Shown here: piece after piece, positions 4,893-57,654 of the stretch
Numbering within the stretch: position 1 is the first letter of the stretch
Layout of the letters: each line of letters opens with the position of its first letter
Source of the DNA: Intoshia linei
Lineage: Eukaryota; Animalia; Orthonectida
DNA: 57,987 nt
NCBI GenBank assembly: GCA_001642005.1
Contig: LWCA01000082.1
Location: 1-57,987 of the forward strand
Direction of reading: 5' to 3'
Notes under the pieces: generated by a model
Told to the model about the DNA's origin: nothing
The model's input: the letters and a program-made list of their open reading frames with translations, nothing else
Database searches by the model: none
Made by a program: the position numbers and the translations under genes

Positions 4893-7800
4893 CTCTTCTG
4901 AATATAAGTAATTTTACTAGCTTTAATTGCGTCAATTAAAATTTTCCTGTAATATTTAATACATCGTGATAGCAAAAAAATGATATTTATTGATACCAAT
5001 AAGATGTTTATATTGATTCAATGTTTTCGTTGAATCTCTGGTTAGGTACGTGGTTTTTTACACGCCAACATCATCAGTATGACGAAATCAAACACATCAC
5101 TATGTAACTAAAATACGTGTATAATATACAGTTTATATTATACTGACAGAGATGGGGTATTTTATTTGACTGATTATTTCATGAATTCATCATTCATCAA
5201 TAATTATTTTTAGTTATGCCTAAATCAAGTAAATCATTTATCATAAAATAATATAATCAATGTTGTCAAAAATGTATATTGCACTGTAGGGCTTTTCAAT
5301 TAAACATTTTTTTAATATCAAAGTGGCATATATTATAAACACATTTTACTTTTTTGCAGAATAAAATAAATACGTTTGATTTTGATCCAAAAAACCCAAA
5401 TTTATTGTATATTTTGTTAATCGTCAGCGGACCAATTCATTTGAAAACAACTGATATCTGTGTTTTTATTACTTTTTAATAAAAAATGTAAATTTAGTAA
5501 AACAGAGTAAATTTATAAACCATTGATTTGTGATACGGCAAGATATTTTCATTAATTTGATTAATAATTTATTATTTTAGACTCCAGTAAAATATTAAAT
5601 TTGAAAATTTTTTTTTGAAAATTGTTAATCTTTATACATTTAATTTATTTAGCTGTGGCTGAAAGTAAAAATTTTATTCCAGTAAATAATGTAAATAATA
5701 CCCATTTTTTGTATTGTAATCATTAATATAAAAATTTCATTTTCTTGTCGACTAAATGATTTATAATGTAAAAAAGTAAAGATGTTGATGAAATAAAGAT
5801 GTAAAAATGTATTACAACAAATTCTAAACATTGCAAACTAAAAATAAATATTAAGAATATCGATTCTATTCTTTTACCAATATTATTTTATAAATAATCT
5901 GATAGATGTATTATATACCTAAATAAAATTAGTAATGTATAATGGGGCTATTCCAATTGGTACTTTTTTTTTTAAAATTTAAAAATACATATATAGATAA
6001 TAATAATCTCCAATTAATTTGCTGCAGAATAATATAAATCTTTTTTATTTTTGTCGTAAAAAACCACCGCGTCTTTACCTTTTTCTGTTTTCCTAACATT
6101 TTTTCCGTAGTTGCCTTGCATTTTTTATAATTTTAAGATATAACATATATCATATGACACTAACTATATTAATTAAAAACATCATTAAAAATTCGTTTAT
6201 TTTAGACACAGTTCACAGACAAACTTTTCGTCATGTTTAAAAAAATTATATAATTTTAAAAAAAGACATGAATTTATATGAACTGGGTCAAAATAATTTA
6301 AATACTTCTACTTAAATATTTGTTAAGTATAATATATAATACTATTGTAAAAAAATTATTTTGTTAAGTTTATAATATTAAAAGTAAAACGAATTTAAAA
6401 ATAATAAAATTTAATTCATTAATTTTGTGAATATTTTATTGCCGTACATACTACATATATTTATATTTATATTTCTTAACTATTTTTTTACATAAGTACA
6501 TCTTTACATAGAAAATTGGTACGAATTTAAATTAAATTTGTTTATAGTTTTTGAACATATATTTTCAATTTTAATAATTAATTTACTAACATTATATATG
6601 TAGAAAATGATCTTTCACAAGGTTAAATGGTCATTATTATACTGTTTAATTCAACAAAATATGAAAATATTTTGGACATTCCTTGTTAACTTTCAAATGA
6701 TGAAATCATTTCAATATTAGACATTTTTAAAAGTAATATAAATTCAGATAAATTTAAAATTGGTATTATTTAAATTTATTAACGCGACAACGGATTATTA
6801 AAATTTTCAATAAAATTAACTGAGAAATCATAAAATGAAAACTTTAAACTTCATGACGCGGGGGTTTTTTTGGATAAAAATTAAAAATATGAATATCATT
6901 CTGCAACAAATTAAGAGGCGCTTATTTTCTATATATGTGATTTTTATTAATGAAAAATGAAATAACCATATTGTATAACAATAATTTTAATTATTAAAGT
7001 TGCTAAAATTAACAATGTTTATTGAGCATAATTTTGCATTTCTTGTATTTAAAAAAAATAATGCGAGTAGGTAATAATAACTCATACCTTATACTAACTT
7101 AGTGTAAGGTTAATAAATTTAAAAAGTATATTAGGCTATAATGTAATTATTATAATAGTTGGTAATTTGTTTATACAGATTAAAGACGATTTCAATTTTT
7201 CTGTTTATTCTAAAACAGTGATTCTTAACCTGTGCGCCGCAAAGATTATTTATTTATTTGAGTTTATTTATAAAAAAGTTTTTTTTTTTATTTAAAAAAA
7301 TTTTATAAATTAGTTTTAAACTTTTACATTGACAATTCACTGATTAACATTTTTTAATGTACTATTAAATATAATAATGTATTTATATTTAATAATATGG
7401 TGACCAGATAATATAAATATATACATATATATATACATAACAAAAAATATAAATACATTTTATCAGACATTAATAGTTCTTTGTTAAATTTAAGTTAACC
7501 AAATAAATATATTTTTTTATTATTATTACGATTATATATTTTTATTTGTTTTAATCTTTGTACAATTTCGAATTTGGTGTGCTTTTTTTTTATTAAAATT
7601 TAAGGTGCGACCAAATTTTTATTTATTTCACAATTGCGCCATGAAGAAAAAAGGTTAAGAAGCACTGATGTAAACCAGTGGTTCAAAACTCATTTTGTCT
7701 ACCGCCTTCTTTTTAACAATATATTTTTTCATTGCCCCTTTCATTCGCGTTAAAAAAATTTTCATAGCGATATCGCCCACTTTGGCAACCTCTGGGCTAA

Positions 7801-8963
7801 ACTTTAGCTTGTCTCGTATTTAATTTTATAGAATTAGAATTATAATTAAATTTATTACAATATTACAATAATGATTAATGTCTGTATCAATGATGTCTCA
7901 ATTTTTAAATTTAACAATACTGATGTATGCATAATTTATCCCAAAATTAAATTTGAGCGAAATATCTAAATAGAAAATAACTGGTATTGGCGAGGTAGAG
8001 AGATTTTTTATTTTTATTAAAAAATGTATATTAATGTAAATGTATCTTTAGTTTAAAATTTAGATTTACTATTTGCGTATGAAATTATAATAAATTTTAT
8101 ATTATTTTATAAATATAAATCAATAATTATTGGTTAATAACTACACTGTGCAACATTCGGAAAATGATTATTGATAAAATTTTGGCAAATTACTCTAACT
8201 AATTATATTACAGTAGGAGCTCTATATACTATAATACTTTTTATTGAAATTTCATATAAACATTCCATATACTAAAACACATAATTTTATTTCATAGCGT
8301 TACTATCAAAAAAAAGTACTTTTTATTATTGAAATACTTTTCATTGAAATGTTCTTATTTTAAAATAACGCGTGTTGATTTTTGTATGGAATTTGTTAAC
8401 ATTATTTAAATTTGTTCGAAATTTTTTTAAGTATAAATTTTAACAAGCAACTTGCAATTGAAAAACGCAAAATACTCTTATTTGTTGATAACTGCACAGC
8501 TCATGTTATGAGAAATGATCTACTTTTTATTAAATTGGCTTTTCTTCCTAAAAATACTACATCAGTGTTACAACCTATGGACAATGTCCATTGGACATTA
8601 TTAAAATAATCATAATAATCATTGAAATAAAATATCATTTTAGTATATAGAGCTTCTATTGTAGTTAATATGCCAAATTTAAATAAAATCCGTCATGAAG
8701 TTTAAAGATTTATTGGTTTTAATTATTAACCAAAAATTAATTTTATTTCTATTCAACTGATCATTAAATATCAGTAGTGCGTTATTGATGACTTTGTGAT
8801 ATTATTTTTTAAATGATTTCCGTAATAATTATAATATATGTTATAATAAACATTGTTTATGTGAAAATTTATTTAGTATTTTCATTAAATTTTATGTAAA
8901 AAGTTAAATTTATAATTTCTTTATAGTTTTATTTTTGTTTTTAAAGCAAACGGGATCGAATGA
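4893..8963 (+). CDS. Candidate micro-exon series 1 (separate micro-exon gene, or 5' part of the downstream one)
   Basis: AG/GT-bounded symmetric exons open in phase 1: 4893-4907 (15 nt), 5214-5228 (15), 5581-5586 (6), 5653-5664 (12), 6369-6383 (15), 6604-6621 (18), 6721-6732 or 6721-6762 (12/42), 7135-7161 (27), 7974-7994 (21), and a possible terminal exon 8947-8963 ending in TGA. Joined: xLLNI-IMPKS-NS-TVAE-IYNIK-KNDLSQ-DIFKSNINSDKFKI-GYNVIIIIV-ENNWYWR-ANGIE*. Start exon unresolved. Confidence 0.4.
7216..7794. mobile_element. Two adjacent hAT (Buster/Charlie-type) MITEs
   Basis: Element A 7216-7667 (CAGTGATTCTTAACC...GGTTAAGAAGCACTG) and element B 7676-7794 (CAGTGGTTCAAAAC...TTTGGCAACCTCTG). 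They are separated by an 8-bp nnnTAnnn spacer, ATGTAAAC. Confidence 0.7.
8211..8661 (+). mobile_element. Internally deleted pogo/Tigger DNA transposon with DDE transposase fragment
   Basis: TIRs CAGTAGGAGCTCTATATACTA / TAGTATATAGAGCTTCTATTG flanked by TA. Internal ORF 8412-8609 contains KILLFVDNCTAH and FLPKNTTSVLQPMD, typical pogo/Tigger DDE motifs. Confidence 0.85.
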
Positions 8964-10263
8964 GTATACTTCATATTAAAATCGCTCAAAATTTAACGAT
9001 TTTAGAGATACTTTATGTAATATTCATATTAACCAGTTACTAAAACACTAACTTGAGATCGTTGTAACTTCCATCCTGCACTATAAATTTTTCTTAAAAT
9101 TGATGAGTAGATTTCTATTATGTATATTAACATATTATGAAAATATTTTTGAGATCCCGACTATAATTTTTATTCTAGAATCTAGATTCTAGATCAAGTG
9201 CACAAGTTTTCCACCAATTCAACTAAAAAGCTACTTTTATATTATTATTTTAATTTACTGGCCGCACAAAATTTACTTTGACACTGAGAAAATATTAATC
9301 CATTTTAAGAAAATGGCCAAAGTCAAAAATGTAAATTTTTGATAAAAATATTTTAATTTGCCCTTGAATAAAATCTATTTTAAACTTTTTCAATTCGACG
9401 TAAAATGATACATTTCATTGCACATTAGATTAACCACAAAATTTAAATTAAGTTATTTTGAAAAGATGCCCATTGTACAAATTTACAAAATTATAAAGAT
9501 ACGAAATATTTCGCGTCTTAACAATGCCAACATTTTAATATGCTTTAACTACACACATAAATAATAATGTAAATTTTCTATCGTTTGAAAAACTTCAATC
9601 GGCCCAAAGAGGTCGATTCTTCCATTATTGTGAACCATTGCTCATACAGATCAGTATTTTTACTACTACCTTTAAATGTTTACTGTGGACCTAAATTTTA
9701 GATTTAATAAAAGTGTTTTCTTAAAATTTTAATACATTTTTCAATAGGATTTAATTAATTAGAGAAACTGGGAAAAGTCAAAAATGTTACTTTTAATTAA
9801 AATATTTTAAATGGCCCTTAAATAACATAAATATAATCTTATTCAAACTTTTCAATTTGAAGTGATTTCAAATAATATATTTTATTATGATCACATTGAT
9901 TTTTCACGGCCGCACATAAACGCGTTCACGGGCGCGTGCGGTCGTACGGTTTCAGGTTGTGCACCTTGTTCTAGATGCTAGATTTAGGTGGTCAATTTTT
10001 ATTTTACATAAGAGTACCTTTTAAAGACGAATCGGCAGGATTGGTTATTGAATATTTAATTCATCTCATACAAAAAAAAGTATATACCAAATACCTTATT
10101 TTTTCATGTACAATAGGGTGTCATATTTTTTGAAAAATACAATGTACATTGTACAATGTAGATTAGTATTGATGAGAATAATATATTCTAACATCATTAT
10201 AATCAGAACTTACTGAACTTATATTTAAATTATGTATATATATTATTAATATATTTATATAGG

Positions 10264-13200
10264 ATGCTTGGTTATTTTTTAACATTTAGTTTTTTGTTAT
10301 GTAATCTGTATTATAATTATACTTATTTATTTATATTATAATTATTTAGAATGTAAATTTAAACATGCTTACTCAACTTGCTGATTAATTTAGTTAAAAT
10401 TCCGAAAAAATGAATTATATAGATTTTCATCCATATTTCTTTATTGGAAATGTGTAGACGTTTAATGCACATTTTTTTTGAAATTGTAGGATCAATATTT
10501 ACATTTTCAATTTTTATTTTAATCGAAATATTTGAAAAATATTGGTTGATAATATATTAAAAATTATTTTTTACCGGGAATGGATAAATTTCAGGAGTAA
10601 AAATTTTGTATTTATATCAACTGGAATAAGCTGTATCATAAAATTATTTTTTTTTAAATTATTTATTATTTCACATTTTTTGTTTTTTGTTAATAAAATA
10701 TTTCGGAAAAAAATATATGTATATTAAAGAGCTTTTTTGACAGTTGTTGTCTTTCAGTTGTTTTCAGTATTCTTTTCGGGTTCTTAAGAAGTTTGAATTA
10801 CGCGATAACTGTATATATTGATATTCATATACATATTATAATAAATATATATATTTATTAATCTAGTTTGTAAGTGTTTTTATGTCAAGATTTTGTATAT
10901 GGCATTATGTGTGCCAAATGGACACACTCCATCATAATTTATGTGTAAAATCGAGTATATATAGTATTTGGGTGTATGTGAATAAAAATTAACAAAAACT
11001 TTTTTTTTTGAATCTTAATTTATTTAAAAGTTTTTTTTGTCTAATTTTCATTAGTTTGCTCGTGTTTCATTTATTGACTTTTAATAAAAATATAAATTTA
11101 TAATTACGTTCATAAATGTATTTATTAGTAATTTTATATATTTTAGATGTTGAAAGTAACATTCAATACAATTTATAATTTTGATAAGGTATCACATATT
11201 TATATTAATTTTTAGGACAATTGAAATTTATGATGAAAAGTAATCAAATCTACATTATTATCAAATTCACCCTGTTTAGTCTTAAATATTATTAATATAT
11301 TTTAATCATTTAGACCCAAGTAATTGTCTTATTTAATTACCTTCTGATATATTTATTCCGCATACATTAATAAGTAAAGAGATAACGTCATTTGTCAATA
11401 GTTTTTGTTAGATTTGTGCAATATATCAACATAGTATCAGTGCAGTGGTGCAATTATACCAGTGTTTCTGATACGGTCGGTCCTGGTGTACTAGTGCATA
11501 CAGCAAATTTAATGTGTGGTTTATGTTTTATGCTTATTCCGGGAGAAATTGAAAACGAGATATAGTCCATTTCACTGAGAGTGAGTTAAATCAGACTTTT
11601 TCTTTTTTGTACTGAATCAACTTTGTTTCTTAAATTTTAAAAATTTTTAAATACTTCAAGTACGCCCGATGTAAAATATATTGAGAAACACTGGATTAGA
11701 CTATAATTTCTATTGTATATTGATAGACTATTACTATTATTACTATAGACTATTACTAATATTACAAAAATATTATTGTATTTATGAATTTCATTAACTT
11801 AAAAAAGTTGGACCACGTGTTACAATAAACTGTATTATGCAAATAAATAATATTTCAAAATTAACATTTATTTAATACATGTCGTACATAACGTTTTTAT
11901 TAAACATGTAAGCCTATCTTTTATGTATGGGTGACACTTTTAGGTTGTCGCAAAAAAGTGACAAAATTCAGACCCTTAATGTTTATATTATGGTGTAAAA
12001 GTATATTCATACCATATAAATGTATATAAGTGTATTTATTCTATATTAAAATTAAAACTATTATTTAGATTTCATTTTAACTCCGTGTATGATGATTTAA
12101 AATCAGATTATTACAATATAACCTCTCTAAGTCAAATCCTAGTTAAATCAAAATTATCTCGCTTTAATTTGTAAAAATTTATACAAATTGAAATACAATA
12201 TTGTATCTTAATAACTTTTAATTTTACTACATTCCTATTTTTATATTATCATGACTATCACGTACAAATTGCAAATGCAAATTTACACGAATTTATCGAT
12301 TTGATTTAACGAGGATTAAAATTTTGATAATATTCAAATCGTTATTTAGATTCATTTCTAAGTAATTTTAATTAAATTTATTAAAAATAGTTGATTAAAA
12401 ATATTTATGATTTTAATACATGTATCATTATATATTATTATATATATATTAGGGTGATTCATTTTTGAATTTTTTTTGAATTTCAAAAACTATTTTTACA
12501 TACCATCCCCATTTTGTACAAGTAGGAGCATACCACAAAAAATTTTTTAAAATTATAAAAATTTCCCCTGCCCCGGTAAGGGTAATATTTATTTTTTACA
12601 TAATCTGATTTTTTAGCTTTCGTGTGTTTTTTCTATGCTCTTCGACAACCTGTATCAGGTTTTGTTTAGAATTTTCATTTATGGGTCCAAAATTTTGATA
12701 TTGGTCAATCAATGCCACTACACGTTCTGAGATATCATTGACCACCTAGATTACATTTATATAAAATTTATAAAAAGTATATAATAAACTAGAAATAAAT
12801 AAAATAACCTTTAAAGATGATACAAACATATCAGTTCTTCTAAAAGATTCATGTGAAGACATTTACGGGGTATTGCAAAATATCCAATATGTCCAGAGTT
12901 ATCACAGTGAATCTGGATTCATGTTTGACAAATGAGATTTTAAATTTAGGTTCGTTTTTGACCTTGGTGTAATCTTGACAATATTTATATTAGACGTAAA
13001 AAGTATTTTAATGCCAACAAAGACTTATCTGATTCATATAAATTTTTGCTGAACAAAGCTAATAGGACTAAAGATCCGCTTAGATACCATAAATGTCTCT
13101 TTAATGCTTTTTCTGCCTGAAACGCCATACTATTAGAAATACCTCGAAACAATTGTAAATTCTTATATAGCTGCAAATCACTTAATGCAGCTTCAGTTGC

Positions 13201-16200
13201 GTATATGCAAGTAAACCATTGTGTAACATAAATTGTAGAAAAAAATATACACAGTTCTCTAATTCCTGTTGAAATTTCGTTATCCACTTGAAATTGTTTC
13301 CTAAACATCCACATTTTAATGCAATATATGGCTTTACTCATTCATCTCGCGTAGTGAAAAGCATTTGGACGTTTGAACTGTTTCTTTATAATTCCATGAA
13401 ACATTAAAGATAGCTCTAATAATTACCCGTAATCATCACGAATATCCACATTATGTGAAATATATAATATATACATCTATATACAGTATGTACAGTAGCG
13501 ATGTTTTTCTACATGTATATAAAATGATTGTATTTCAATCAAAAAAAGATAATGTGCTCTAAAATTTTGAATAAACTTGAAAAGAAAAAAAAAATTACCA
13601 TTTTCCTATCGTTTTTAATCTACGTCAATTTGAAGTGTCTATATAACCGCTTATGATTAACGTAAATAAAAATGTAATTAAACGGTTATCATGAAAATAT
13701 ATTTTAAACGATTTAATAGTATATATATATGTTGACATCTAAAAACAACACGGACCAGTTTCTAAAACCGGACCACATTTCTTTCATTCATTTGAATTCA
13801 AAAAATTTTCTCATTAATATTATACGACAATATTTTAAAAAAAATTAAAACTGGACAATGTGAAAAATATTTTAAAAGATTCAATTTTAGAATACATCCA
13901 CGAATGCCCCATAAAAAGGTTTTAAAACAACTTGTTGTTTCAAAAAGTGTGAATACAACACATACAACATTTTTCGTGGTTGTATTTTTTATAATTGAAA
14001 ATATTTCATTATTTATTCACGTTAGTTTATGCTGTACTTAATTTCCGTATTATAACTAATTTCAATTTAGTTAACAACATGATATTTCAAGGTAATTTAA
14101 ATAAAAATTTTTGCAAATGATTATTATTACATAATATTAAATTTGGAATGTTTTAGTTTACAATATGGGTAATTTATTATTTTATAATATTGTACATAAT
14201 GAAAGTTTATTCCAGGTTAAAGGATAAAACATTTTAATTTTATTCATTTTCAGTCAATTTTAATTAAAATAATGGTTAATAATATCAAATATAATTATTA
14301 TAACGATTGATTAACATTGTAAATATATTATTTTAGAATCGAAAGGTAATTAATAGAATAATATCAATATTATTAAGTAAATTTAATTTAAATATAAAAT
14401 TTTGTAATTTTTAATGATATTTTAATTAATTAATAATAATAATAAATATATTATATCATTTTAGCACAATTTATCAGTAAGCTAAATTGATTAATTAATT
14501 TTTTGAATAATTAATAAATAAATTTTGTATTCTATAATTTAGATCCGCACTTTTTGACAAGTAAATCATTATTTCTATCATAGTAAATCAATTAATTTAT
14601 TTAGGACTTAATCAATTTAGTAATTTTTTCTTTTATTGATTAGTTCAATATTTCTTAAATATTCATAAATAAATACTTTTTCAATTGCTCGCAATTATCA
14701 TAAATTTAATGTTTTATGCCACTGCGCAATGTACACCACTGGTATGACACCAGTGGCAAAAATTCTATAATATTATTAAAATTCCGCAGATTCGTCATTT
14801 CTCATTAAAATTTTAGCTGTTGATATTTTTTTTCTATTATTCACATATGCCGGCGTATTATATACTAGTCCGTTTGGTGTACAATTTGAGAAGCACTGCA
14901 TTAACAAGTCCAAAACCAAAAACTTTATAAAAAGATAATTTATTAATCTAACTGTATATCAGAGCCATGTCAATGATACGGTTGGACCTTCAGTCGTAAG
15001 CGTAAGTTCAATGTCAAATTCAAAATGTAAATATAATGATTAGGTCAGGTTTCTCAAGAGGATAAAAAGAATTAAGAAAAAATACCCAAAAATGTGGCAA
15101 AGATATATTTATATATAAAACATAGAACAAAATAGAATTGTTATTTTTAGCGCTCTCTTCAACATACCCTGTAGAAACTACTTTTAGTTCAGCTGTAAAT
15201 ATATTCACAAAGAAGAGAAACTGATTAAATATTGTTAATCGAGGATTAAACCAATGATTAAATCTAACCAATTTGAAATCGGATATAAAAAAATTTCGAA
15301 TACTATGTAATTTAGGCTCTTGAAAAAATATCTAATGAATTTTAAATTGTGTTGGTTCAATTGTAATGTTCATCCATGGATACATATATACATTATTTTA
15401 TTGTATAGGGGGCGTTAATCTAAAAATGGTTGAGCACCCTTCTTTAGAGAATGGACGTCAATAGTAATGCAATGTAAACATCGTGTCATAGTCAGTATTT
15501 TAGATTTTAGTAACAAATTCAGGTATAGATGAATCCAATTTTTTTTTTTACCATAATCGGCATAATTTGAACCTGACACCGTACTGTATACAATTTCTCG
15601 AAAATTGTTTAGATTTTAGGTAGATTTTGTATATTGTCTACTAATTGGTGTTTAGTTTAATTTTTAAGATTTTGAACCTGTCAAACGAAATTAAATCGAA
15701 ATCCTGCAATTTTAATACAATCCCATCATTACTTCTAATAAAATAAAATTCAAAGTTTTCTTGTGTCGCCGTTAATAGTTAACCGTTAATAGATTGTTAC
15801 AAAGGAAAGGGACTCATGATGCAATGACAAACATACTTAAGGGTTATTGGCCACATAAACGCGAATTGTCGAAATGTGCGGGCTCTGGTGTTTCTTTGAT
15901 TGAAATGATTATTTTTATTAAACTTTTTTAGAATCTGGTGATTTTATCAACTTTAAACGAATACAATATTTAAAATGTTTATATTTACATTATTTTAGAA
16001 CGCATGTTGGCTTATTCATGTATATTTATTTATAATCAAAATAACCGGAATTTAGCCGAGAAATTATATATTACATCTTTTCGAATAACCAACATTTATT
16101 TCATAGACCCTCAACTACTAAATACTTTAACTGAAAAGGAAAATTGACTTTAGTCAACCCTCATTCTCTTGAGTTCAAATTTAATTTAAGATCTTTGTAA

Positions 16201-16744
16201 TTGGTGTGGGATAATGAGTAAAAATAAAAATTATTTTAAATTTTGACCTTGACGGAGTAGTCTGTTAGTACGAGAAATAAAAGTTTACAAACCGAAAATA
16301 GGTAAATTATGTTTTACCGAATATGTAGTATATATAGTGAATATAGAATTTACTATATCACATCTATACATAATATCACATAGAAGTAGAATAGTGGGAT
16401 ATATCTATTTTATCGAATATTAATGATTAATTCTTTTTGTAGCTAGAATTATGGGAATGGGTGGAAATACAATGGGAGGTAGTCCATATAATAATGCACA
16501 AATGCCAGGTATGATGCCTCAAATGCCAGGTATGATGCCTCAAATGCCAGGTATGATGCCTCAAATGCCAGGTACGATGCCTCAAATACCGGGAATAATA
16601 CCTGAAGGACCAGATATGATCAATCCGAGGATAAAAGCACCAATCAATAAAGCATCATCTGCAGATTTGCCCAGCCCGGAAGTCGTAGCTGCAGTAGAAA
16701 ACAATAAGGACACGAAAGGTAAATTTGAAATAAAAATAAACTAA
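10264..16744 (+). CDS. Putative micro-exon gene encoding a secreted Met/Pro/Gln-rich repeat protein
   Basis: Exon 10263-10300 (MLGYFLTFSFLL, signal-like). Phase-1 symmetric micro-exons follow: 10867-10869, 11055-11063, 11147-11155, 11216-11239, 11314-11319, 12069-12086, 12350-12361, 14071-14091, 14157-14168, 14337-14345, 14465-14476, 14543-14560, 14605-14619, (15511-15522), (15932-15937), 15999-16019, (16191-16196). Terminal exon 16443-16744 is entered in the correct phase. Protein: MLGYFLTFSFLLFFCSYVERQLKFMMKNPNFILTPYSFLINNMIFQVYNMESKAQFINPHFLTRLNQFKRMLAYSSRIMGMGGNTMGGSPYNNA(QMPGMMP)n... Confidence 0.7.
10420..10720 (-). mobile_element. Inverted partial copy of the Helitron-like interspersed repeat (see 49587-50400)
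   Basis: Reverse complement matches 50040-50345, e.g. GTTGATAATATATTAAAAATTATTTTT and TATTTATATCAACTGGAATAAGCT. Confidence 0.7.
11460..11693. mobile_element. hAT-type MITE
   Basis: CAGTGTTTCT...AGAAACACTG terminal inverted repeats with degenerate 8-bp flanks AATTATAC/GATTAGAC. Confidence 0.6.
12450..13445 (-). pseudogene. Degenerate intron-containing transposase (hATm-like) inside a micro-exon gene intron
   Basis: Motifs RDDYG*LLELSL, PNAFHYAR*MSKAIYCIK, HLWYLSGSLVLLALFS and LK|VVNDISERVVALI...QVVEEHRK, with stops and frameshifts. A 63-nt GT-AG intron lies at 12746-12808. The terminus TAGGGTG at 12450 is like that of the 1926-2982 element. Family assignment is from recalled motifs. Confidence 0.7.
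16499..16603 (+). repeat. 21-bp coding tandem repeat (QMPGMMP x5)
   Basis: CAAATGCCAGGTATGATGCCT: three perfect copies plus two degenerate ones (QMPGTMP, QIPGIIP). Confidence 0.95.
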
Positions 16745-16836
16745 AAATAAACTAAAAATAACGCAGAATAAAGAAAAAACGAATAAAGAATTTCTTAATT
16801 TATTAGCTGAAAAATATATTAATTAAATGTTAACAT

Positions 16837-17106
16837 TTATCCAGATTTGAACAAAAGAATTGCAACTTGGCCAAGATAAAAATAAATGAAATTTTTTGCT
16901 TCGTGAGTACAATAACTTCCAAAATTTCTTCCAACAACGCAATGCCATGTAGGATTGTATTTTTTGTCAAATTCTCGTTTAATATAAGTTGCGATATCTT
17001 TTTCAACGTTAAATTTTTCTAAGGCAGTTGTAGCTACTTCAACCACTTCTTGTTGCATATCCTCTGGCATATCCACATTTTTAAAAATTACATGTCTTTC
17101 AGCCAT
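16837..17106 (-). CDS. DYNLL: Dynein light chain LC8
   Basis: 89 aa with [35 protein letters not shown]...[14 protein letters not shown]. Likely 36-nt 5'UTR intron at 17108-17143. Confidence 0.98.
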
Positions 17107-49200: not shown

Positions 49201-51668
49201 CTATATCATATAAAAATTTCTAAAAGCATTACACGTTGATAACGGTTGTATTATATATGAAGTATAGGTTACTTGTTTCATTCATACAACTCACAAATCG
49301 TGAGTAACGACATCAATAAACAACAACAACAACAACAAAATTTACCTGCAAAAGTCGAAACATATGCATTGCAATTTAAGCAAGAATGCGACAATATTTT
49401 GAACGAAACAAAAAGATGCACATTATGATTTTCTGCCAATTGGCAAATATTTTGACAAATATCTAATAAAAGATAAAAGTATAATATGTAAATAAAAAAT
49501 TAATTTTATATTTGAAAATTTAATTGACATTTATTATAAAAATATTTATGTATATCAATATCCTGATGTATAAGTATATATATCTTAACTTGTATATTAA
49601 ACTACGTGATTTTTGTTTGTATGTGTGTGTTTAACTTTATTTAAATAACTACCAGTCTTAGAATTTTATAAAGTCACATTTCAATTACAGTTTTTTCCGG
49701 GACGTATAATAAGATAAATTTCTACCTCCCAAACTCACATCTTACGGGTCAAAAACCCTTAAAAGTCCCTCTTTTTGAAAATCCAACAAGTTAGAGAATT
49801 TAAAAAAATATATACGCTGATACGGATTTTAAAATCATAAACATTATCCATAAATTTAAATAAAAAAAATTATATCTTCAGGGCCAAAAACCACAAATTC
49901 CCCTTCCTTTTTTTTAAACAGCCCTAGAAAATCAAAAAATTTACAGGTGGTACAGTTTTATCCTGTTATCACACATAAAAAATTTCAATCCGAATAAGTG
50001 ACGACTTCACGGTCAAAAAGCATTTTAGTATTTATATATTTTTTTTCCGAAATATTTTATTAAAACAAAAAATGTAAATAATTAAAGGTCCGAAAATAAA
50101 AAAAAAATTTATTCTGATAGAGCTTATTCCAGTTGATATAAATACAAAATTTCAACCCCAGAAATCAACCATTCATAGTGAAAAATAATTTTTAATATAT
50201 TATCAACCAATATTTTTTAAATATTTCGATTAAAATAAAAATTAAAAATGTAAATATTGATCCTACAATTTTAAAAATAACTGTGCATCGAACATCTACA
50301 TGTACACATTTTCAATAAAGAAATATGGGTGAAAATCTATATAATTCATTCCTTCGGAATTTTTTTTATTGGTACGCAATTTTTAAATCTCATATTCTCA
50401 TTATATAAAATACTATTATAAAAAATGACTATCAATTATGTAATTTGATATATAAATCAGCCGAGTGAAAAAAATTTATATATCAACTTTGTTTGAAGTT
50501 TACTCAAAGGAAAGGAGTTTTCAATATAAAAATTCATAATAATAACTAAAATAAATTTAAATTCTGTTTTTTCTTTAGTTCAATTTTAACTTATAATCCA
50601 TACATTTTATTTTTGTTGTTATTGGCAACATTTACAAACCCTTGTAAATTATTTTATTAAATATTTAAGTATTCGCTAACATATTTTCCATTTTTACCTG
50701 GCTGATTCATTTTATAAAACGTTTCATTTTTTTCAATGACGAAATTCGTTTTGAATTGAGTATTTTTCATTTTGGAATCCTTTAAAAAATCTAAGTTTAC
50801 AAATGTATACCATATAATTTTTAAATTTTATCGAAACGTAAAGACATAAATTATGAATATTCTTAGAATCTTTAAAGAACCCTAGTATAATAGAATACAA
50901 CTACAGTATTCTCTCCACAACTCGCCAACTTTTTCTAAATCCCAAGAATGGCGAGTTATAGAGAGAATATAACAGTGATTATAAACCATTCCTTGAATAT
51001 TTTATGAAAATTGATTGAAAAAAGTGAAACGCGACGTTTTGAGATCACTGTTTTTTGTATTTATTACATGCAAAATTTCATAAAACATTACTTAAAAGAT
51101 TTAATTTATAAAAAAATATAAAAACGTACCAAACACGTGTGTTTCGGAAATTTCATTAGGAATATGAATTGTAATTTCTATTAATTGTTGAATCTAAAAT
51201 GAATTTAAGATAAAACTATACTAGTGATAAGAAATTTTTTTCCTCGTATTTCCCATGATTCACCAATAATCTCAAAATTTCTACCATACATAGGGGTATG
51301 TATGAACCACCTTGATGACCTGAACTATACGAATAAAATGTTTTGAAAAATAAACAGAATAACCAACTTTAACTTTAAATATAAAATTGGAAGAGGCGAA
51401 TCTTCATTCAAAAATACATTTTGTTTCAATTAAAAAGCGATGGATCAAAAACAGTTGAGAATTTCTGATTTAGTTTGTTCACATTAGAACGGTGATTTAT
51501 AAATAAAACTATTTTTGCGATTACCTTCTCATTTAAATATTTTTCAGGTAAACTCTGTAAGTGTGGTCTATATACACGTGTTGTATAATACCAGGTTGGC
51601 AATCCGATAAAAATTGATATAAAAATGTATAATAACGAAATAATGCATTGTAAAGTTATTTTTTTCAT
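40209..51668 (-). CDS. PIGS: GPI transamidase component PIG-S (multi-exon, TE-expanded introns)
   Basis: N-terminal IGLPTWYYTTRVYRPHL (51668 exon), ISPDWGGIYSLN (~43530), SLIDTISVIPVSDQIS (~42180), DPLLTKSLYFPEDQK (~40660) and terminal YGIYIPLFLPLAIPLIASIK...* (stop at 40209). Not all internal exons were delimited. Confidence 0.9.
47497..48400 (+). mobile_element. Helitron-like non-autonomous interspersed repeat with internal subrepeats
   Basis: Begins TATATAATATGACACGCGATTTTTGTTTGTGTGTCTGTGTG and carries repeated GGTCAAAA(C)CACAAATTACC-polyT-AATGAAAA units. Near-identical to 49587-50400. Confidence 0.65.
48736..48924. mobile_element. hAT (Buster/Charlie-type) MITE
   Basis: CAGTGGTTTTCAACC / GGTTGAAAACCACTA, with TSD GTCTAGGT/ATCTAGGT. 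Confidence 0.85.
49587..50400 (+). mobile_element. Helitron-like interspersed repeat, second copy
   Basis: Long near-identity with 47500-48070 and 55080-55575. Confidence 0.7.
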
Positions 51669-51844
51669 TTCAATTTTATTTCCAAATGACTCGTTTTGAA
51701 GTTTATTGATGGATTTTGGCGTTTATCACATAGATTTGACGAATTAATAACTTTTATGTTAATATATAGACCAGGGTGCAGTAGTTGATAATACTGCCTA
51801 GTTGTCATTATTTTTGCGGAAATTTAATACAAAATCATTTACGT

Positions 51845-52137
51845 CCGTGATTCCCAAACTTATTATATATACCATTTATATATTTTGTCGGCGCCTCTGA
51901 AATAATTATGTAAATTAGATGTGTTTTGACTTTAAACACATTGCGAGTGAGGGCCAAAAATACATTTTTCAAATTTCGCGGGCCGCAACAAATATTTTTG
52001 AATCAATTATTTAATCATTCCTTCTATCTTGGTTTTTTGCTTTTTTTATAAGATTATAATCTTAGCACCGCTGATTATTATTGTTAATATTTTATAAATT
52101 TTAAAAAGTTTGGCGACACACCGGTTGGAAAGCACTG
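51845..52137. mobile_element. hAT-type MITE
   Basis: CCGTGATTCCCAAAC...GGTTGGAAAGCACTG termini. Confidence 0.55.
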
Positions 52138-52701
52138 CGTTAATTTATATTACGTTACAAGTGAACCATTCATAATCTCTGAATTTAATAGTTAAATATT
52201 TGTTTGATTCGCATATATATTTGTTTTTGTATTTAGGTAATATTAGTATTAGTGTAATTTATATTTTAGGACTTTTTGACTTTATAAAAAAGTAACTTGG
52301 ACTTTTAGTTGTGAATCTACCAATTTTTGAGTTGAAATTAATCTTTTACTGAATTTTTGTTTTTGAAATATTTGAAAAATCACAGCTTTCTCAATAAATA
52401 GTTTCACATTCATTTTTAACAACAATTTATATACATTTTATGTAAATTGTAAAATTCAAAAATTTTTCAATATTTAAGTGGCCCCTTGGATTTATAATTT
52501 ATCCCACAACCCCTCAAATATTTCGATTTAATTAAAATTTACTAGAAATTGAAATAAGATGTTTAAATATTTTAACTGCAATTTTATTCTGTTGAATATC
52601 TTATATCCATATTGCAAAGTTAATTTGAAAAATGTAAATATTTAAATTTTTACTTTTCAAATAGTAGCTAGAAATTCATTTGCAATAATATTGAATAAGA
52701 C

Positions 52702-54578
52702 ATGTTTACATTAAGTATAAATTTATAAAATCCTTCTATAATATTTAAAAATTGGCTGTTATACTTTGTATGGCTGTGTGCATCAGCATAGTGGGTAAAT
52801 AATTTAAATATATATGCATTGCCGTGATAGGAAGACTTTTTAGTTGGTCTGTCAAAAAAATGTTTGCTGTTTTCTTTTTTAGTTGCGTGTCACTTTTAAA
52901 TGATAAATAATTTTAGGTACTTTTACGTGTGTATTTTGCTTTTATTACACACTTTTGAATTATTACACTGGTGACAAGTATGTCATATTCTTGCCATCAT
53001 TGCCCTAATGTATATTTATCTCTATCAAATTATAATTTAATAACCTAATATATATAATATGAACCTAACAATTATTATTTAAGAAAGTGTACTACAGAAT
53101 GAAGTTAACATTGTATCCAACTGTGTCAAGTATGTAGATGGAAAGTGTTCTGATTGTAGAACTCATTATGGACTGTTGAATAATAAATGCTACCGTATGC
53201 CTTATTTTGGGGATTTATAATTATATTTAGCTTGTGAGGATAGTTCTTGTTTAAATTGCAGTCAATACAAATGTCTACAATGCGTGGTTGGTTATGGAAT
53301 TAAAGGAAAATATTGTTTCGGTTAATTATATATTATGAATGTTTTAATGTTTATTAGATTGTAATATATCACACTGTATTTCATGTTATCTAAAACGTTA
53401 TTGTAGTGAATGTGAACATGGATATGGACGATTTTATGGTTTCTGCTATAGTATTTATTTCATTTTAATGAATCAATTAATGATTGCATAATGCAAACTA
53501 CTTTATTATTAGACACCTTGACTGTTAAGTAGGGTAGCGTCACAGTGTGGAGGGGTGTGGTCCTTTCTTAGTATTGATGATGGCTTCCCAAACTTAATTT
53601 GTCTACCCTCCCCTTTTTAGCAATATATTTTTTTACGCCCCCTTGAAAAAATGTACTTAATAATTATTATTGCATAATTAAAGTGATTATGAGATATTTC
53701 CAAAGTCCATGTTTAATAATAAAGAAAATTATATATTTATTGTCGTGTGGGCAGACGACGATCGCCGTGACACGACATTTTAAAATTATTTCAATAATGT
53801 AATTCTCTCTTTCCTACATTATCTGCCTCACTCTACTATTTTCAGCTAAATAATTTTATATAAGTAAGGATGTATATAATATTCATTTAAATATTAATTA
53901 ATTGATAGAATGCTCTTTTTCAAATTGTTCGGATTGCAATAATAAGTATTGCACAAGATGTTATCCAGGGTACGGCATAGATGCATTTGGAAATTGTAGA
54001 AGTAAATCGCTACTTATGTTTATTATTACTTATTTATTTAGAATGTATGATTGGAAAATGTTCTTTTTGCAAAGGAAGCATTTGTTATAAATGTTTACCT
54101 AGTTACTATCTTAAAGCCAATTATTGTAACGGTATTACTAATTATTATTTAATTATGAAATAAATTAAGCATATTATAATTTCCAAAGTATGTAAATTGA
54201 TAGATTTTAAAGATGTACAAAAAATCATGATTATATTGATGAATTAATTTAATATGAAACGGGGAATTATTTTAGTAAAAATTGAGGGTAGTCATAAAAA
54301 AAATTTCTGATCTCTTTATTGAATTATTTTGTCGGGCACAGTGTGCACACCTGACTGGTGAACCGATTAATCCATTTGCCATGTATAATGTGTGTATTAT
54401 GAATACATTGGGTTTAATAAATTTACGTTTAGCATGTCACACTGGATGCATTGACTGTATGCAAATTACTGTTATAATTGCAAAAATGGATATAATAGAA
54501 TCAAAGGAATTTGTTACAGTAAGATTAATACATTTTTATTATTTTATCATACATATTAATAACATTTTAGGAGTATAA
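52702..54578 (+). CDS. Secreted cysteine-rich CxxC-repeat protein (furin-like/VSP-like repeats), possibly a recent pseudogene
   Basis: Signal-like MFTLKLAVILCMAVCISIVES from exons 52702-52714 and 52750-52794. One repeat per phase-1 exon follows: 53084-53194, 53231-53320, 53358-53450, 53909-54001, 54042-54131, 54433-54518; the last exon is 54571-54578. Consensus Cx4Cx2Cx4-5Cx2Cx2GYx5-6C. Confidence 0.75.
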
Positions 54579-54645
54579 AGATAGCTATATTTTTCCAAAT
54601 ATGTAGTTATTATTAAACATTACTCAACGTAGTTCTTAAATTCTT

Positions 54646-55580
54646 TACTCATATAAAAAAGAATGTTTGTGTGTGTGACCATTTATTTATTTATTTATTA
54701 TTATTACATTTATTGAAAAATTGACAGTCGAGAATTTAAAAAAACCCAATTTCTAATACTGTTTTTACCAGAGCGTGTTTTTATCTATTTTTGACTTTCA
54801 GAATTTGAGTCCTTCATGGTCAAAAATACAATTTTCCCTTTTGTTTAAAAAAAAATCAGCCCAACAATGTAATTAAACATACATTCTGAGACACATTTTA
54901 AAATTATTCATATTGTAGTTAATCTTAGCCTCAGACACGCATATCTTCATGGTCAAAACCACAAATTACTCTTTGCTTTAAAAATAAAACATGTCCTAAA
55001 ATGTTATTAAACATAAATTCTGGGATAGTTTTTAAAATCATAAACATTATAATAAATGGAAACCTCAAAAAAAATAATTTTCACGATCAAAACTCCACAT
55101 TACTTTTTTTTAAATGAAAACACCCCTAGAATTAAAAAAATTACACATGGTACAGTTGTATCCTGTTAAGACACACAAATAATTTCAATCTGAATAGGTG
55201 ACGCCTTTACGGTCAAAAAAGTACTTTAAAATTCATTTTTTTTATTTCGAAACTATTTTATTAACAGAAAAATTGAAATAATTAATAGTTCTACAATTAA
55301 AAAAAATATTAGTCGGATAGATATTATTCCATTTAATATAAATACCAAAGTTCAATACCAGAAGTCTATCTATTCCGGTGAAAAATAATTTTTAATATAT
55401 TATCAACCAATATTTTTCAAATGTTGGATTAAAATGAAAAAGTAAAATAATCATCCTACCTTTCAAAAAAATGTGCATTGAACGTCTACACTTTTCCAAT
55501 GAAGAAATATGGATGAAAATCTATATAATTCATTCATTCGAAATTTTTTTCATTGCTACGCAATTTTTAAATTTCAAATT
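54646..55580 (+). mobile_element. Helitron-like interspersed repeat, third copy
   Basis: Same TGTTTGTGTGTGTG head, GGTCAAAA subrepeats and 3' block as the 49587 copy. Further partial copies lie at ~43870-44075 and 57915-57987. Confidence 0.65.
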
Positions 55581-56127
55581 ATCATTTTCAAAACATTTTG
55601 TTTCAAATTTTAACTACAACAACGAAACTAAAAGTAATACAACTTTGTTATTATCATTTTTATATTTATTACAATCCTTTGCAATATTGATAAAATTCGA
55701 CTGAAATGTTTATAAATTGAAGATTCAGTTAATTATTGATACACAATTGGTATTTTTAAGTATTTATTAAATTGATACTGAATATATATTATCACATTGA
55801 AAATAAGAAAATAGGTTTTTAAAATTTTATTTTTTCTGGAATTTATGCTATTTATGACTATTTTTAAGATTGAACTGTTTTAACTTTATTTTTAATATTA
55901 TACACACATTCTGTCTAATAAATTAAAAAAATAGGATAACAATTGTTTTTAAAATGCTTTACACAAAAGTGAACAAAACAAAATTAAGATGGAATAATTC
56001 TCTTCAAAGTAAAAAGTAATGTGATATGATGGTTCCACCTGAAACAAGTTTGGAAATTACTCCTTTGAAGGATTTTTAAATTAGATTTTCAACGTGAATT
56101 TATTTTTTAAGTTTAATAAAAATGTGC

Positions 56128-56533
56128 CCTCGGCAGAGCTAGGTAAAAATTTACGAGCTAGGTCCTGTTTGTACGTAGTGTATAACAGTCAACCTACAAT
56201 TAGTAGTAACTATTATAATAGTATTCTGAAAAGTTTTCAGTAAAAATATAGTCACAAAACGTACATACAATATACATTTTTATATATTTATTATTTAAAT
56301 ATATCTTTTTTCTTGTGGATCCTTATTTGAGAAAAATAATAATTCAGGACTCCTGATTAATCGAAAATAAAATCTGTTTTTGGATTATTCGCATTTTTTC
56401 AAATCATTCTAATAGAAACATTTATTTCATTTCATATTTCATAATTAAGTACGAAAATTAAACAAATGTATACAATTAATTACAGCTTGAATGCTACGTA
56501 CTTCGTAAAAGCAGTACCTAGCTCTGTAGAGGT
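56128..56533. mobile_element. MITE with CAGAGCTAGGTA inverted repeats
   Basis: CCTCGGCAGAGCTAGGTA versus TACCTAGCTCTGTAGAGG. Confidence 0.55.
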
Positions 56534-57654
56534 GCTTTTAATTCTACCAAAAATATATATAGTATATTTTACATATAAATGCTACTGTTCACTATTTCCA
56601 ATCATCTCAATGAGTGGTTCCTGAACTTGTTTCAACATTTTTTAATGCGTTTTTTTAATTGAACTTTTTTTCCACCACCCATATGAAATATCGATATTTA
56701 TAGAGAAATTCATCTATTTGAATGGGGTCTGAACGTATTGTCATGCACTGGAAATGTATATTAGAACCTAAATCCTCGACAGAACTAGCTACTGTTTGCG
56801 TGAAATACATCATAGACAAGCTAGTAATCAGGTAAAATATGATTAATCAATATCGAGACAACGACACAGTGATTGAGAGACATGAAATGGAATCATTGTA
56901 ACAATAACAAAAAATGACATTGTTTGCAAATTAGGTTACAGTTGAAATTGATTTGAATTTATGTATTTACGAAAAATGTTTATAGTAAATATCCTTAAGT
57001 TAGTTATTTTGTGGGTAGGACTATTGGTTACATGTATTTCAGGTATTTTATAGTAATTTTGTATGTATAAATCATGTACTGTATTGTGTTTACTTTTCGA
57101 TTTTGATTAAATCACACGACAAAAGGAACTAAAAAACAATTTAAACCTACATTTTAACAAAATTTTGATCTAAATACATATAAAATATATATATACCAGC
57201 GTGGGACTATTTTTTTCCAATTTCATTGAGAAATTTTCAATTAATTAAATTTGTACATGAAATGTTTGTTTATTTTTATAATTAAAAAATTATAAAATTA
57301 GTACTTGATAGGATTAATGTTTTCCGTCATTTTAAATGTGAATCAGCTCCGTTGTCTATTTTTTGCAATTTTTATGTTTAATAAAACGTCTCATAGCATG
57401 GTATCGTGAATTGTTTTAATTAACACAGTAGTCGTTGATATAAAGCACACCATTTCGATAAAGGGTTTAAATCCTTGTGAAAATGAATACTATGAATAAT
57501 TAGTGTATTATGATAATTACTAATTTTGTTATATTTTTGACATTTCAGATAGACTTGAAACTGAAATTTCAACGGTTATTGGGATCATTGCAATTTTTTG
57601 ATATACATATGTAGTATATAAATTGGGTTAAATTTATATGGTGTTTTTATTTAG

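What the first reader, a model, noticed from the sequence alone, without database searches (positions are those of the whole stretch)
10263..16744. Hidden micro-exon gene: ~14-17 symmetric 3-24 nt phase-1 exons between a signal peptide and a repeat-rich terminal exon
Seen in sequence: T-rich acceptors (mostly TTTAG) are followed a few bases later by GT donors (mostly GTAA/GTAT). Core exon lengths are 3, 9, 9, 24, 6, 18, 12, 21, 12, 9, 12, 18, 15 and 21 nt, all multiples of 3. All read open in phase 1 and enter the orphan 16451 ORF via TGTAG|CT AGA ATT ATG in the right phase. The first exon encodes a hydrophobic signal-like peptide. Established knowledge: signal exon plus many symmetric micro-exons plus a conventional last exon defines the micro-exon genes (MEGs) of Schistosoma, which generate variant secreted proteins by exon skipping. 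Inference: this is an independently evolved MEG-type protein-variation system in a different, tiny-intron animal genome, invisible to ORF and gene finders. Caveat: exons were picked by eye in AT-rich DNA, so selection bias is possible.
Basis: partly seen in the sequence, partly recalled or inferred. Interest (0 to 1): 0.95.

Follow-up and report, generated by a model that had tools for sequence, protein, structure and literature searches.

The report
Expressed micro-exon gene, exons 3-33 nt
This AT-rich stretch hides a real, transcribed gene assembled from at least 14 exons of only 3 to 33 bases, two of them just 3 bases long, a layout known mainly from blood-fluke micro-exon genes; the proposed signal-peptide exon is wrong and its function is unknown.

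Summary
On the + strand of 10263-16744, TTAG|3-40 nt|GTAA/GTAT segments number 36. Of these, 23 are 3n long and all 23 are open in phase 1 (0 stops in 93 codons). Shuffles and 156 kb of control DNA never exceed 13 and 10.

Contigs of public runs hold the spliced form. One contig (depth 231) joins, in order, exons of 13(end)-8-3-3-9-24-6-18-12-21-12-9-12-18 nt. Other contigs join 16301|16443, the predicted entry into the QMPGMMP exon.

Corrections:
- The "signal" exon is not used. ATG 10264 sits in an 8-nt internal exon (10263-10270).
- That exon is joined upstream to 8064-8076, and the mRNA runs at least 219 nt further 5'.
- A 33-nt exon (16269-16301) was missed.

Secretion and exon-skipping variation remain untested. 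The terminal exon has no homologues, is predicted disordered, and differs about 6-fold more between samples than the introns do.

The genome size (41.6 Mb) fits the orthonectid Intoshia linei. First readers of this scan noted similar arrays elsewhere in this genome (unchecked). The joined protein was not searched.

The parts
7838..7883 (+). Candidate start exon (unverified). ATG at 7871 gives MINV and ends in phase 1; an in-frame stop lies at 7847.
   Evidence: Sequence only. The donor is GTATCA. This is the only upstream ATG-to-donor segment I found by eye that fits phase 1. No transcript evidence.
8064..8076 (+). 13-nt exon, phase 1 in and phase 2 out
   Evidence: Its last 7 nt (TATTTGC) are the first letters of the 30-nt loose end of the X1 spliced contig. 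It is the only TATTTGC+GT site upstream.
10263..10270 (+). 8-nt exon GATGCTTG, phase 2 in and phase 1 out.
   Evidence: Present in the X1 contig loose end. The word is unique in the window and is flanked by AG and GTTATT.
10350..10352 (+). 3-nt exon AAT
   Evidence: X1 contig reads GATGCTTG-AAT-TTT-ATGTTGAAA. It is one of only two AG|NNN|GT sites in 10271-11146.
10867..10869 (+). 3-nt exon TTT
   Evidence: Same contig. It is the second of the two AG|NNN|GT sites, in the right order. No 6-nt AATTTT exon exists in that interval.
11147..11155 (+). 9-nt exon
   Evidence: These are the last 9 letters of the loose end before 11216 in the X1 contig.
11216..11239 (+). 24-nt exon
   Evidence: Aligned piece of the X1 contig (depth 230.7); joint 11239->12069.
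11314..11319 (+). 6-nt exon
   Evidence: The six letters between joint 11239->12069 are ATCCAA; the reference reads ACCCAA, a synonymous variant.
12069..12086 (+). 18-nt exon
   Evidence: Aligned piece between two joints of the X1 contig.
12350..12361 (+). 12-nt exon
   Evidence: Letters ATTCATT stand between joint 12086->14066. The remaining TCTAA was laid over TTTAG at 14066-14070.
14071..14091 (+). 21-nt exon
   Evidence: Aligned piece of the X1 contig. Its acceptor is also used in the 14033|14071 joint.
14157..14168 (+). 12-nt exon
   Evidence: First 12 of the 33 letters between joint 14091->14543.
14337..14345 (+). 9-nt exon
   Evidence: Letters 13-21 of the 33 letters between joint 14091->14543.
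14465..14476 (+). 12-nt exon
   Evidence: Letters 22-33 of the same insert, with one T>A difference that changes Phe to Tyr.
14543..14560 (+). 18-nt exon. Its acceptor is confirmed; its donor is predicted.
   Evidence: The joint lands at 14543. The donor GTAAAT is read from the sequence.
14605..14619 (+). 15-nt exon, predicted only
   Evidence: Strict TTTAG/GTAATT sites, 3n length, open in phase 1.
15999..16019 (+). 21-nt exon, predicted only
   Evidence: Strict sites, 3n length, open in phase 1. X2 and X3 contigs read through it unspliced.
16269..16301 (+). 33-nt exon. Its donor is confirmed; its acceptor is inferred.
   Evidence: Joint 16301|16443 (141-nt GT..AG intron) is seen in X2 and X3, and X1 contig 7 ends exactly at 16301. 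Among the AG sites after the in-frame stop at 16250, only the acceptor at 16268 gives phase 1 (read).
16443..16744 (+). Conventional terminal exon: five QMPGxMP-type repeats plus a tail, with the stop at 16742-16744.
   Evidence: The acceptor is confirmed by the joints in X2 and X3, and the X1 contig ends at 16443. It is an ORF of 97-105 aa. No homologues, no Pfam family, Atlas model pLDDT 0.25.
12440..13460 (.). Dispersed repeat inside the 1709-nt intron
   Evidence: At least 30 copies in the genome at 72-94% identity. Several diverged contigs lie on it.
13904..14033 (+). Cryptic or alternative 5' exon. An ATG-initiated 130-nt ORF ends in phase 1 and is spliced to 14071 through a 37-nt GT..AG intron.
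   Evidence: Joint 14033|14071 is seen in low-depth contigs (X1 12.1, X2 5.7) that also read 13214-14033 unspliced. ORF.

Best explanation
This is one real, transcribed protein-coding gene with an extreme micro-exon architecture. At least 17 exons of 3-33 nt lie spread over at least 8.7 kb (8064-16301), followed by a conventional 302-nt last exon.

Shown:
- Splicing uses the genome's ordinary GT-AG signals (TTTAG acceptor, GTAAxT donor).
- 16 of 17 introns in the model are in phase 1. The one exception is a 13-nt + 8-nt exon pair that together restores phase 1.
- Two consecutive exons are only 3 nt long.
- Two long introns contain dispersed repeats.

Inferred:
- Each intron is recognised on its own (intron definition, as expected in a genome whose normal introns are 30-60 nt), so exon size is no obstacle.
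- The run of symmetric phase-1 exons arose by serial exon duplication. Recurring NPxF(I)LT-like and NxM/QF motifs point that way.
- The product is a lineage-specific protein of at least about 180 aa, with an aromatic/Met-rich front half and a disordered Met/Pro/Gly/Gln repeat tail that evolves fast.

Its cellular role, and whether it is secreted, are unknown. The 5' end lies upstream of the reported interval.
For: Statistics: 23 of 36 strict segments are 3n long and all 23 are open in phase 1. This exceeds every one of 1000 shuffles and every one of 286 control windows. The signal is strand-specific.

Transcripts:
- The X1 contig (depth 230.7) has joints 11239->12069, 12086->14066 and 14091->14543.
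- The letters between those joints are exactly the 6-, 12-, 12-, 9- and 12-nt exons.
- A 5' loose end of at least 255 nt ends in a 30-mer that tiles uniquely as 8064-76 / 10263-70 / AAT / TTT / 11147-55.
- Joint 16301|16443 is seen in X2 and X3.

Other support:
- The joined 27-mer is absent from the 41.6-Mb assembly.
- There is no second copy of the terminal exon.
- The whole joined model is open from 8064 to the stop at 16742.
- The splice consensus equals that of tubulin introns.
- Repeats lie in the long introns.
- The terminal exon differs at 12 of 272 nt, plus 27 gap letters (a multiple of 3), while introns differ at 22 of 3331 nt. Five changes are nonsynonymous and one synonymous, plus an in-frame RIKA>NV replacement.
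Against: - The runs are not on record as RNA. Their RNA origin is inferred from the spliced contigs and from the very uneven depth.
- Exons 14605-19 and 15999-16019, and the acceptor at 16268, are predictions. The link between the micro-exon contig and the terminal exon therefore rests on matching phase and on continuous unspliced coverage, not on one spanning molecule.
- The start codon and 5' exons are unknown.
- Only contigs were available, not reads, so isoforms and strand cannot be seen.
Confidence: 0.88

Rival explanations
1. One reading: a convergently evolved MEG-type system. The gene would encode a secreted or surface protein of the parasite, and in-frame skipping of the symmetric micro-exons would produce protein variants.
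For: - The architecture matches the MEG definition in several respects: many symmetric exons of 36 nt or less, long introns and a conventional last exon (PMC5825161).
- The coding sequence evolves fast while the introns are conserved.
- 125 of 136 conceivable skip junctions stay open.
- The likely host genome is a parasite's (41.6 Mb, PMC9218549).
- First readers noted other micro-exon arrays in this genome (unchecked).
Against: - The proposed signal exon is not used.
- The confirmed N-terminal part (..LLFAMLEFYVERQ..) carries charges and is not a classical signal peptide.
- Only one isoform is seen.
- Stop-creating skip junctions number 11 of 136 against about 12 expected from composition, so there is no sign of selection for skipping.
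- Micro-exons make up 44% of the known coding sequence, not about 80%.
Confidence: 0.3
2. There are two separate transcription units. The micro-exon transcript would end between 14560 and 15999, and the QMPGMMP ORF would belong to another short gene starting near 15977-16269 or at ATG 16451.
For: No single contig is shown to span 14560 to 16443. X2 and X3 contigs read 15977-16301 unspliced before the last intron, and unspliced depth is higher in 14543-16301 than further upstream.
Against: - Both halves are in phase 1, and the three connecting exons have perfect signals, 3n length and an open frame.
- An unspliced read into 16269 meets a stop at 16250.
- Transcribed coverage is continuous across the gap.
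Confidence: 0.1
3. It is chance AG..GT pairs in AT-rich DNA, or a DNA artefact (a retrocopy or misassembly) rather than splicing.
Against: - All shuffle and genome controls are exceeded.
- The collinear joined contig has GT..AG at every junction.
- The joined word is absent from the assembly.
- Depth is 231 for the spliced form against 12-68 for the unspliced form, and 1728 for the neighbouring dynein contig. That spread is typical of RNA.
Confidence: 0.02

Closest known systems
Micro-exon genes (MEGs) of Schistosoma and other schistosomatids
   Same: Ten or more very short exons, mostly multiples of 3 and symmetric, separated by much longer introns and closed by a conventional last exon. The product has no homologues and is rich in sticky hydrophobic and aromatic residues. 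The coding sequence evolves fast. The gene is missed by automatic annotation (PMC5825161; 10.1101/2023.06.21.545858; PMC4350168).
   Different: - The phylum is different (probably Orthonectida).
- No sequence similarity was detected for the terminal exon.
- Exons go down to 3 nt, twice in a row, and there is an asymmetric 13+8 pair.
- Only 44% of the known coding sequence lies in micro-exons.
- A signal peptide and alternative splicing are not shown.
Neuronal microexons of bilaterians (3-27 nt, SRRM3/4-dependent)
   Same: The exon size range (3-27 nt), the strong bias to 3n lengths, and frame preservation.
   Different: Neuronal microexons are single regulated exons inside ordinary conserved genes and depend on UGC-containing enhancers next to the acceptor (own knowledge). 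Here 17 micro-exons form most of the gene, and 0 of 18 acceptors have TGC within 40 nt upstream, against a 22% background.
Modular phase-1 exon genes of extracellular proteins (exon-shuffling class 1-1 modules)
   Same: Near-exclusive phase 1-1 symmetry, which suggests growth by exon duplication.
   Different: Those modules encode whole folded domains of 100-300 nt. Here the modules are 1-11 codons and no domain is recognisable.

Membership tests
Schistosome-type micro-exon gene (MEG) organisation | A run of about 10-20 very short exons (6-36 nt, up to 81), most with lengths that are multiples of 3 and symmetric | tested here: met
   17 exons of 3-33 nt. Fifteen are 3n long and phase 1-1. About 10 are confirmed whole in spliced contigs and 4 more at one end or in part.
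Schistosome-type micro-exon gene (MEG) organisation | Micro-exons make up about 80% of the coding region | tested here: not met
   237 nt of micro-exons against 299 coding nt in the last exon, which is 44% of the known coding sequence. The 5' part is unknown.
Schistosome-type micro-exon gene (MEG) organisation | Introns much longer than the exons (0.1-5 kb) | tested here: met
   Introns are 44-2186 nt, and nine of 17 exceed 140 nt. The genome's tubulin introns are 32-37 nt. At least two long introns hold dispersed repeats.
Schistosome-type micro-exon gene (MEG) organisation | N-terminal signal peptide, giving a secreted or membrane-anchored product | tested here: inconclusive
The candidate N-terminus MINVYLLFAML.. 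is only moderately hydrophobic. No signal-peptide predictor is available, and the joined protein was not submitted to any tool.
Schistosome-type micro-exon gene (MEG) organisation | Protein variants produced by alternative splicing (exon skipping) | not testable with these tools
   Only assembled contigs were available, and they drop rare isoforms. One isoform was seen. Junction analysis was neutral.
Schistosome-type micro-exon gene (MEG) organisation | Sequence homology to a named MEG family | tested here: not met
   The terminal exon finds only itself. In an exhaustive HMMER search of 1.84 billion representatives it finds only low-complexity QMPG-type matches. The micro-exon part is too short to search exon by exon.
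SRRM3/4-dependent neuronal microexons | UGC-containing enhancer close upstream of the microexon's 3' splice site | tested here: not met
   0 of 18 acceptors have TGC in the 40 nt upstream, against a 22% background.

The most novel reading that the evidence does not exclude
Orthonectids, minute and highly reduced parasites now placed in or near annelids, would have convergently evolved a schistosome-like micro-exon gene system. It would be a set of genes built from symmetric phase-1 exons as short as one codon. In-frame skipping and fast-evolving repeat tails would diversify secreted or surface proteins at the interface with the nemertean host. This locus would be the first transcript-verified member, and the other arrays noted in this genome would be further members.
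Probability: 0.25. Interest if true: 0.9.

Novelty: new variant of a known kind. Interest (0 to 1): 0.75.

Why it matters
Micro-exon gene organisation is treated in the literature as an innovation of parasitic flatworms (PMC4398949) or even as specific to schistosomatids (10.1101/2023.06.21.545858). I found no paper that links orthonectids with micro-exons.

A transcript-supported gene of this kind in a genome outside the flatworms matters in three ways:
- It shows the architecture can arise independently.
- With two consecutive 3-nt exons and an 8-nt exon, it is a demanding natural test of how a spliceosome defines exons far shorter than a single splice-factor footprint.
- It shows that ORF-based and standard gene finders miss such genes entirely. 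Here only the last exon was ever called, so the gene count of this famously 'minimal' animal genome may be underestimated.

Tried and rejected
- RNA runs: the look-up of sequencing runs listed no run on record as RNA. The three listed runs nevertheless hold spliced contigs.
- Homology of the terminal exon: the word-index search found only itself. The exhaustive HMMER search gave 75 hits, all on the repeat (query residues about 13-70), so they reflect low complexity. Pfam found nothing. The ESM Atlas gave no feature hit and its own model has pLDDT 0.25.
- Paralogues: DNA of 13990-14660 finds only AT-rich scraps, and the terminal exon is single-copy.
- Existing annotation: a lookup through the neighbouring dynein LC8 protein found nothing on record.
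Controls are therefore limited to 156 kb.
- 5' exons: a position-weight scan trained on this gene's own sites did not resolve them.
- The upstream run at 4893-6732: 7 of 7 3n segments are open in phase 1, but only 7 of 18 segments are 3n, so it is not significant on its own.
- Selection for skip-compatible junctions: 11 of 136 junctions create stops against about 12 expected, so no signal.
- UGC enhancer: absent.
- Resemblance of NPxF/Met-rich stretches and 'LPSPEV' to the STI1/UBA-linker regions of ubiquilin, Rad23 or Hip: I considered this from memory and dropped it. It is not testable without searching the joined protein, and the FYMINK-rich composition is expected at 24% GC.
- Candidate exon 14026-14046 is rejected. 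It lies 24 nt from 14071 and is not in the transcript.
- Left out by rule: no homology, family, structure or signal-peptide search was made with the joined (spliced) protein. All exons except the last are below the tools' minimum length. Only two short junction words copied from the reads tool's output (16 and 27 nt) were searched, and only in the window and the own genome.
Full report
**Setting.** The window is contig C242 of a 41,603,068-base, 3,520-contig assembly with about 24% GC throughout. The size equals the 41.6 Mbp quoted for the orthonectid Intoshia linei, a parasite of ribbon worms (PMC9218549; lineage). Short introns are reported for that species (median 57 bp; PMC6543705). The identification is an inference from size and composition only. 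Homology-anchored tubulin introns of this genome are 32-37 nt. Their donors are GTAAAT, GTAATT, GTAATA or GTTTGT and their acceptors TTTAG.

**Is the observation more than chance?** I scanned for TTAG | L | GTAA or GTAT.
- With L = 3-30, the + strand of 10263-16744 has 30 segments, 22 of them 3n long. The minus strand of the same region has 8. The rest of the + strand has 75, of which 28 are 3n.
- With L = 3-40, there are 36 segments and 23 are 3n. All 23 are open in phase 1, with 0 stops in 93 codons. Phase 0 has 14 stops in 116 codons and phase 2 has 7 in 93.
- In 1000 Markov-1 shuffles of the region the means were 16.8 segments, 5.8 of 3n length (max 16) and 3.65 open in phase 1 (max 13).
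- In 156,207 control bases of the same genome, both strands, 34.7% of 588 segments are 3n and phase-1 codons are stops at 6.7%. The best of 286 sliding 6.5-kb windows scores 10 against 23 here.

The signal is real and strand-specific.

**Direct evidence of splicing.** No run is on record as RNA. Even so, the contigs of three runs from one study, laid on 10800-16799, include spliced forms.

One X1 contig (depth 230.7) shows three joints:
- Joint 11239->12069 has ATCCAA between its sides. This is the 6-nt exon 11314-19 with one synonymous change.
- Joint 12086->14066 has ATTCATT between. This is the 12-nt exon 12350-61, whose last five letters were laid over TTTAG.
- Joint 14091->14543 has 33 letters between. 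These are exactly exons 14157-68, 14337-45 and 14465-76, with one T>A change (Phe to Tyr).

Each of these exon words, with its AG and GT, occurs once in the window, and they are collinear.

The same contig continues at least 255 nt to the 5' side. Its last 30 letters there end in ATGTTGAAA (exon 11147-55), preceded by TATTTGC-GATGCTTG-AAT-TTT. An exhaustive tiling with AG|x|GT segments gives one sensible solution:
- the end of a 13-nt exon at 8064-8076;
- an 8-nt exon at 10263-10270, a word unique in the window and followed by GTTATT;
- the 3-nt exons at 10350-52 and 10867-69.

These two are the only AG|NNN|GT sites in the whole interval, and no 6-nt alternative exists.

X2 and X3 contigs carry the joint 16301|16443 (a 141-nt GT..AG intron). 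X1 contigs end exactly at 16301 and at 16443.

A 27-nt junction-spanning word is absent from the whole assembly, and the terminal exon is single-copy. The joined form is therefore not a retrocopy. Depths of 231 (spliced), 12-68 (unspliced) and 1728 (the contig shared with the neighbouring dynein gene) are what RNA gives, not DNA.

**Gene model.** The exons are 13, 8, 3, 3, 9, 24, 6, 18, 12, 21, 12, 9, 12, 18, [15], [21], 33 and 302 nt. Brackets mark exons that are predicted only; the 33-nt exon has only its donor confirmed and the 18-nt exon only its acceptor.
- Sixteen of 17 introns are in phase 1. The 13+8 pair makes a phase 1->2->1 detour.
- The joined frame is open from 8064 to the stop at 16742.
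- Introns are 44-2186 nt. The 1709-nt intron holds a dispersed repeat with at least 30 genomic copies. The 749-nt intron holds another with at least 22 copies.
- Micro-exons are 27% GC, introns 24% and the last exon 41%.

1. The hydrophobic 'signal' exon (10264-10300 or 10264-10307) is not used. With the 10300 donor it would even create T+AA = stop at the 3-nt exon. The ATG is an in-frame internal Met, or at best a start with no signal peptide behind it.
3. The second '9-nt' exon is the 3-nt TTT.
4. Candidate 14026-46 is not an exon.
5. A 33-nt exon at 16269-16301 precedes the last exon.

**The product.** The last exon has no Pfam family and no homologue apart from low-complexity repeat matches. 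The Atlas model of it is unstructured (pLDDT 0.25).

Between the reference and the sampled animals, introns differ at 22 of 3331 positions (0.66%). The last exon differs at 12 of 272 positions (4.4%) plus 27 gap letters. Those gaps are one 21-nt repeat unit and a 6-nt net loss that turns RIKA into NV. Five interpretable changes are nonsynonymous and one is synonymous. X3 carries a third allele at the same hotspot. This points to rapid or diversifying evolution, or to relaxed constraint plus repeat instability.

The start is unresolved. One candidate is ATG 7871 in a 46-nt exon (MINV.., moderately hydrophobic). If ATG 10264 is the start, the N-terminus is charged.

Low-depth contigs also splice a 37-nt intron (14034-14070). 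This joins a 130-nt ATG-initiated, phase-1 ORF with a strongly hydrophobic core (13904-14033) to exon 14071. Because the same contigs read 700 nt further upstream unspliced, I take this for cryptic splicing of the pre-mRNA rather than a second promoter. It could instead be an alternative hydrophobic N-terminus.

**Comparison with known systems.** The architecture matches schistosome MEGs in exon size, 3n symmetry, long introns, a conventional last exon, lack of homologues and fast evolution (PMC5825161; 10.1101/2023.06.21.545858). It fails or leaves open the signal peptide, the about-80% micro-exon share (44% here), alternative splicing and sequence homology.

It is not of the neuronal-microexon type, since 0 of 18 acceptors have an upstream TGC. 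Junction codons show no depletion of stops for hypothetical skips, with 11 of 136 against about 12 expected. Skipping would mostly stay in frame, but there is no evidence that it has been selected for.

**What was left out.** Raw reads were not available, so isoforms, strand and transcript ends could not be seen.

**Verdict.** It is a new, more extreme variant of the micro-exon gene kind, probably in an orthonectid. The secretory and variation-generating function remains a hypothesis, at about 0.25-0.3. First readers of this scan noted several similar arrays elsewhere in this genome. Those notes are unchecked and are leads only.

Noticed in passing
window 16837-17106 (-): An intronless dynein light chain LC8 gene (Pfam PF01221, E 1e-40) lies tail-to-tail with the micro-exon gene, 93 nt from its stop. 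An X1 contig (884 nt, depth 1728) starts at 16443 and runs on about 640 nt beyond 16714, presumably into this gene, so the two 3' ends probably overlap or abut.
   Followed up: partly
window 12440-13460: A dispersed repeat with at least 30 copies (72-94% identity) in the genome. It carries a minus-strand 118-aa ORF (12985-13341) with no Pfam match. A 'skips 64, CT..CC' joint at 12745->12810 looks like a copy-to-copy indel, not an intron.
   Followed up: partly
window 11546-11640: A second short dispersed repeat (at least 22 copies, 72-89% identity) inside the 749-nt intron. Similar GC-richer 'gaagcactg / ggttcaaaac'-like scraps recur at about 7640-7700 and 14880-14920 (by eye).
   Followed up: partly
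window 8440-8600 (+): A short open frame reads like the end of a pogo/Tigger-type DDE transposase (..NCTAHV..FLPKNTTSVLQPMDN..). This is by eye only and was not tested. It lies inside the 2186-nt intron.
   Followed up: no
window 14034-14070 and 13904-14033: A 37-nt GT..AG intron is spliced in low-depth contigs of X1 and X2. It joins an ATG-initiated, phase-1, hydrophobic 43-codon ORF to exon 14071. This is either cryptic splicing or an alternative N-terminus.
   Followed up: partly
window 16499-16640: There are at least three alleles of the terminal exon among the reference, X1/X2 and X3. They differ by loss of one 21-nt QMPGMMP unit and, at 16629-16640, an in-frame RIKA>NV replacement in X1/X2 and two substitutions (Ala>Val) in X3.
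   Followed up: partly
window about 50800-57282 (+): This is the only other place in the controls with an excess of 3n, phase-1-open TTAG..GTAA segments (9 of 18).
   Followed up: no
L010, L012, L013 (tubulin loci of the same genome): Tubulin genes are interrupted by 32-37-nt introns with GTAAxT..TTTAG signals. Several tubulin copies exist on different contigs.
   Followed up: partly
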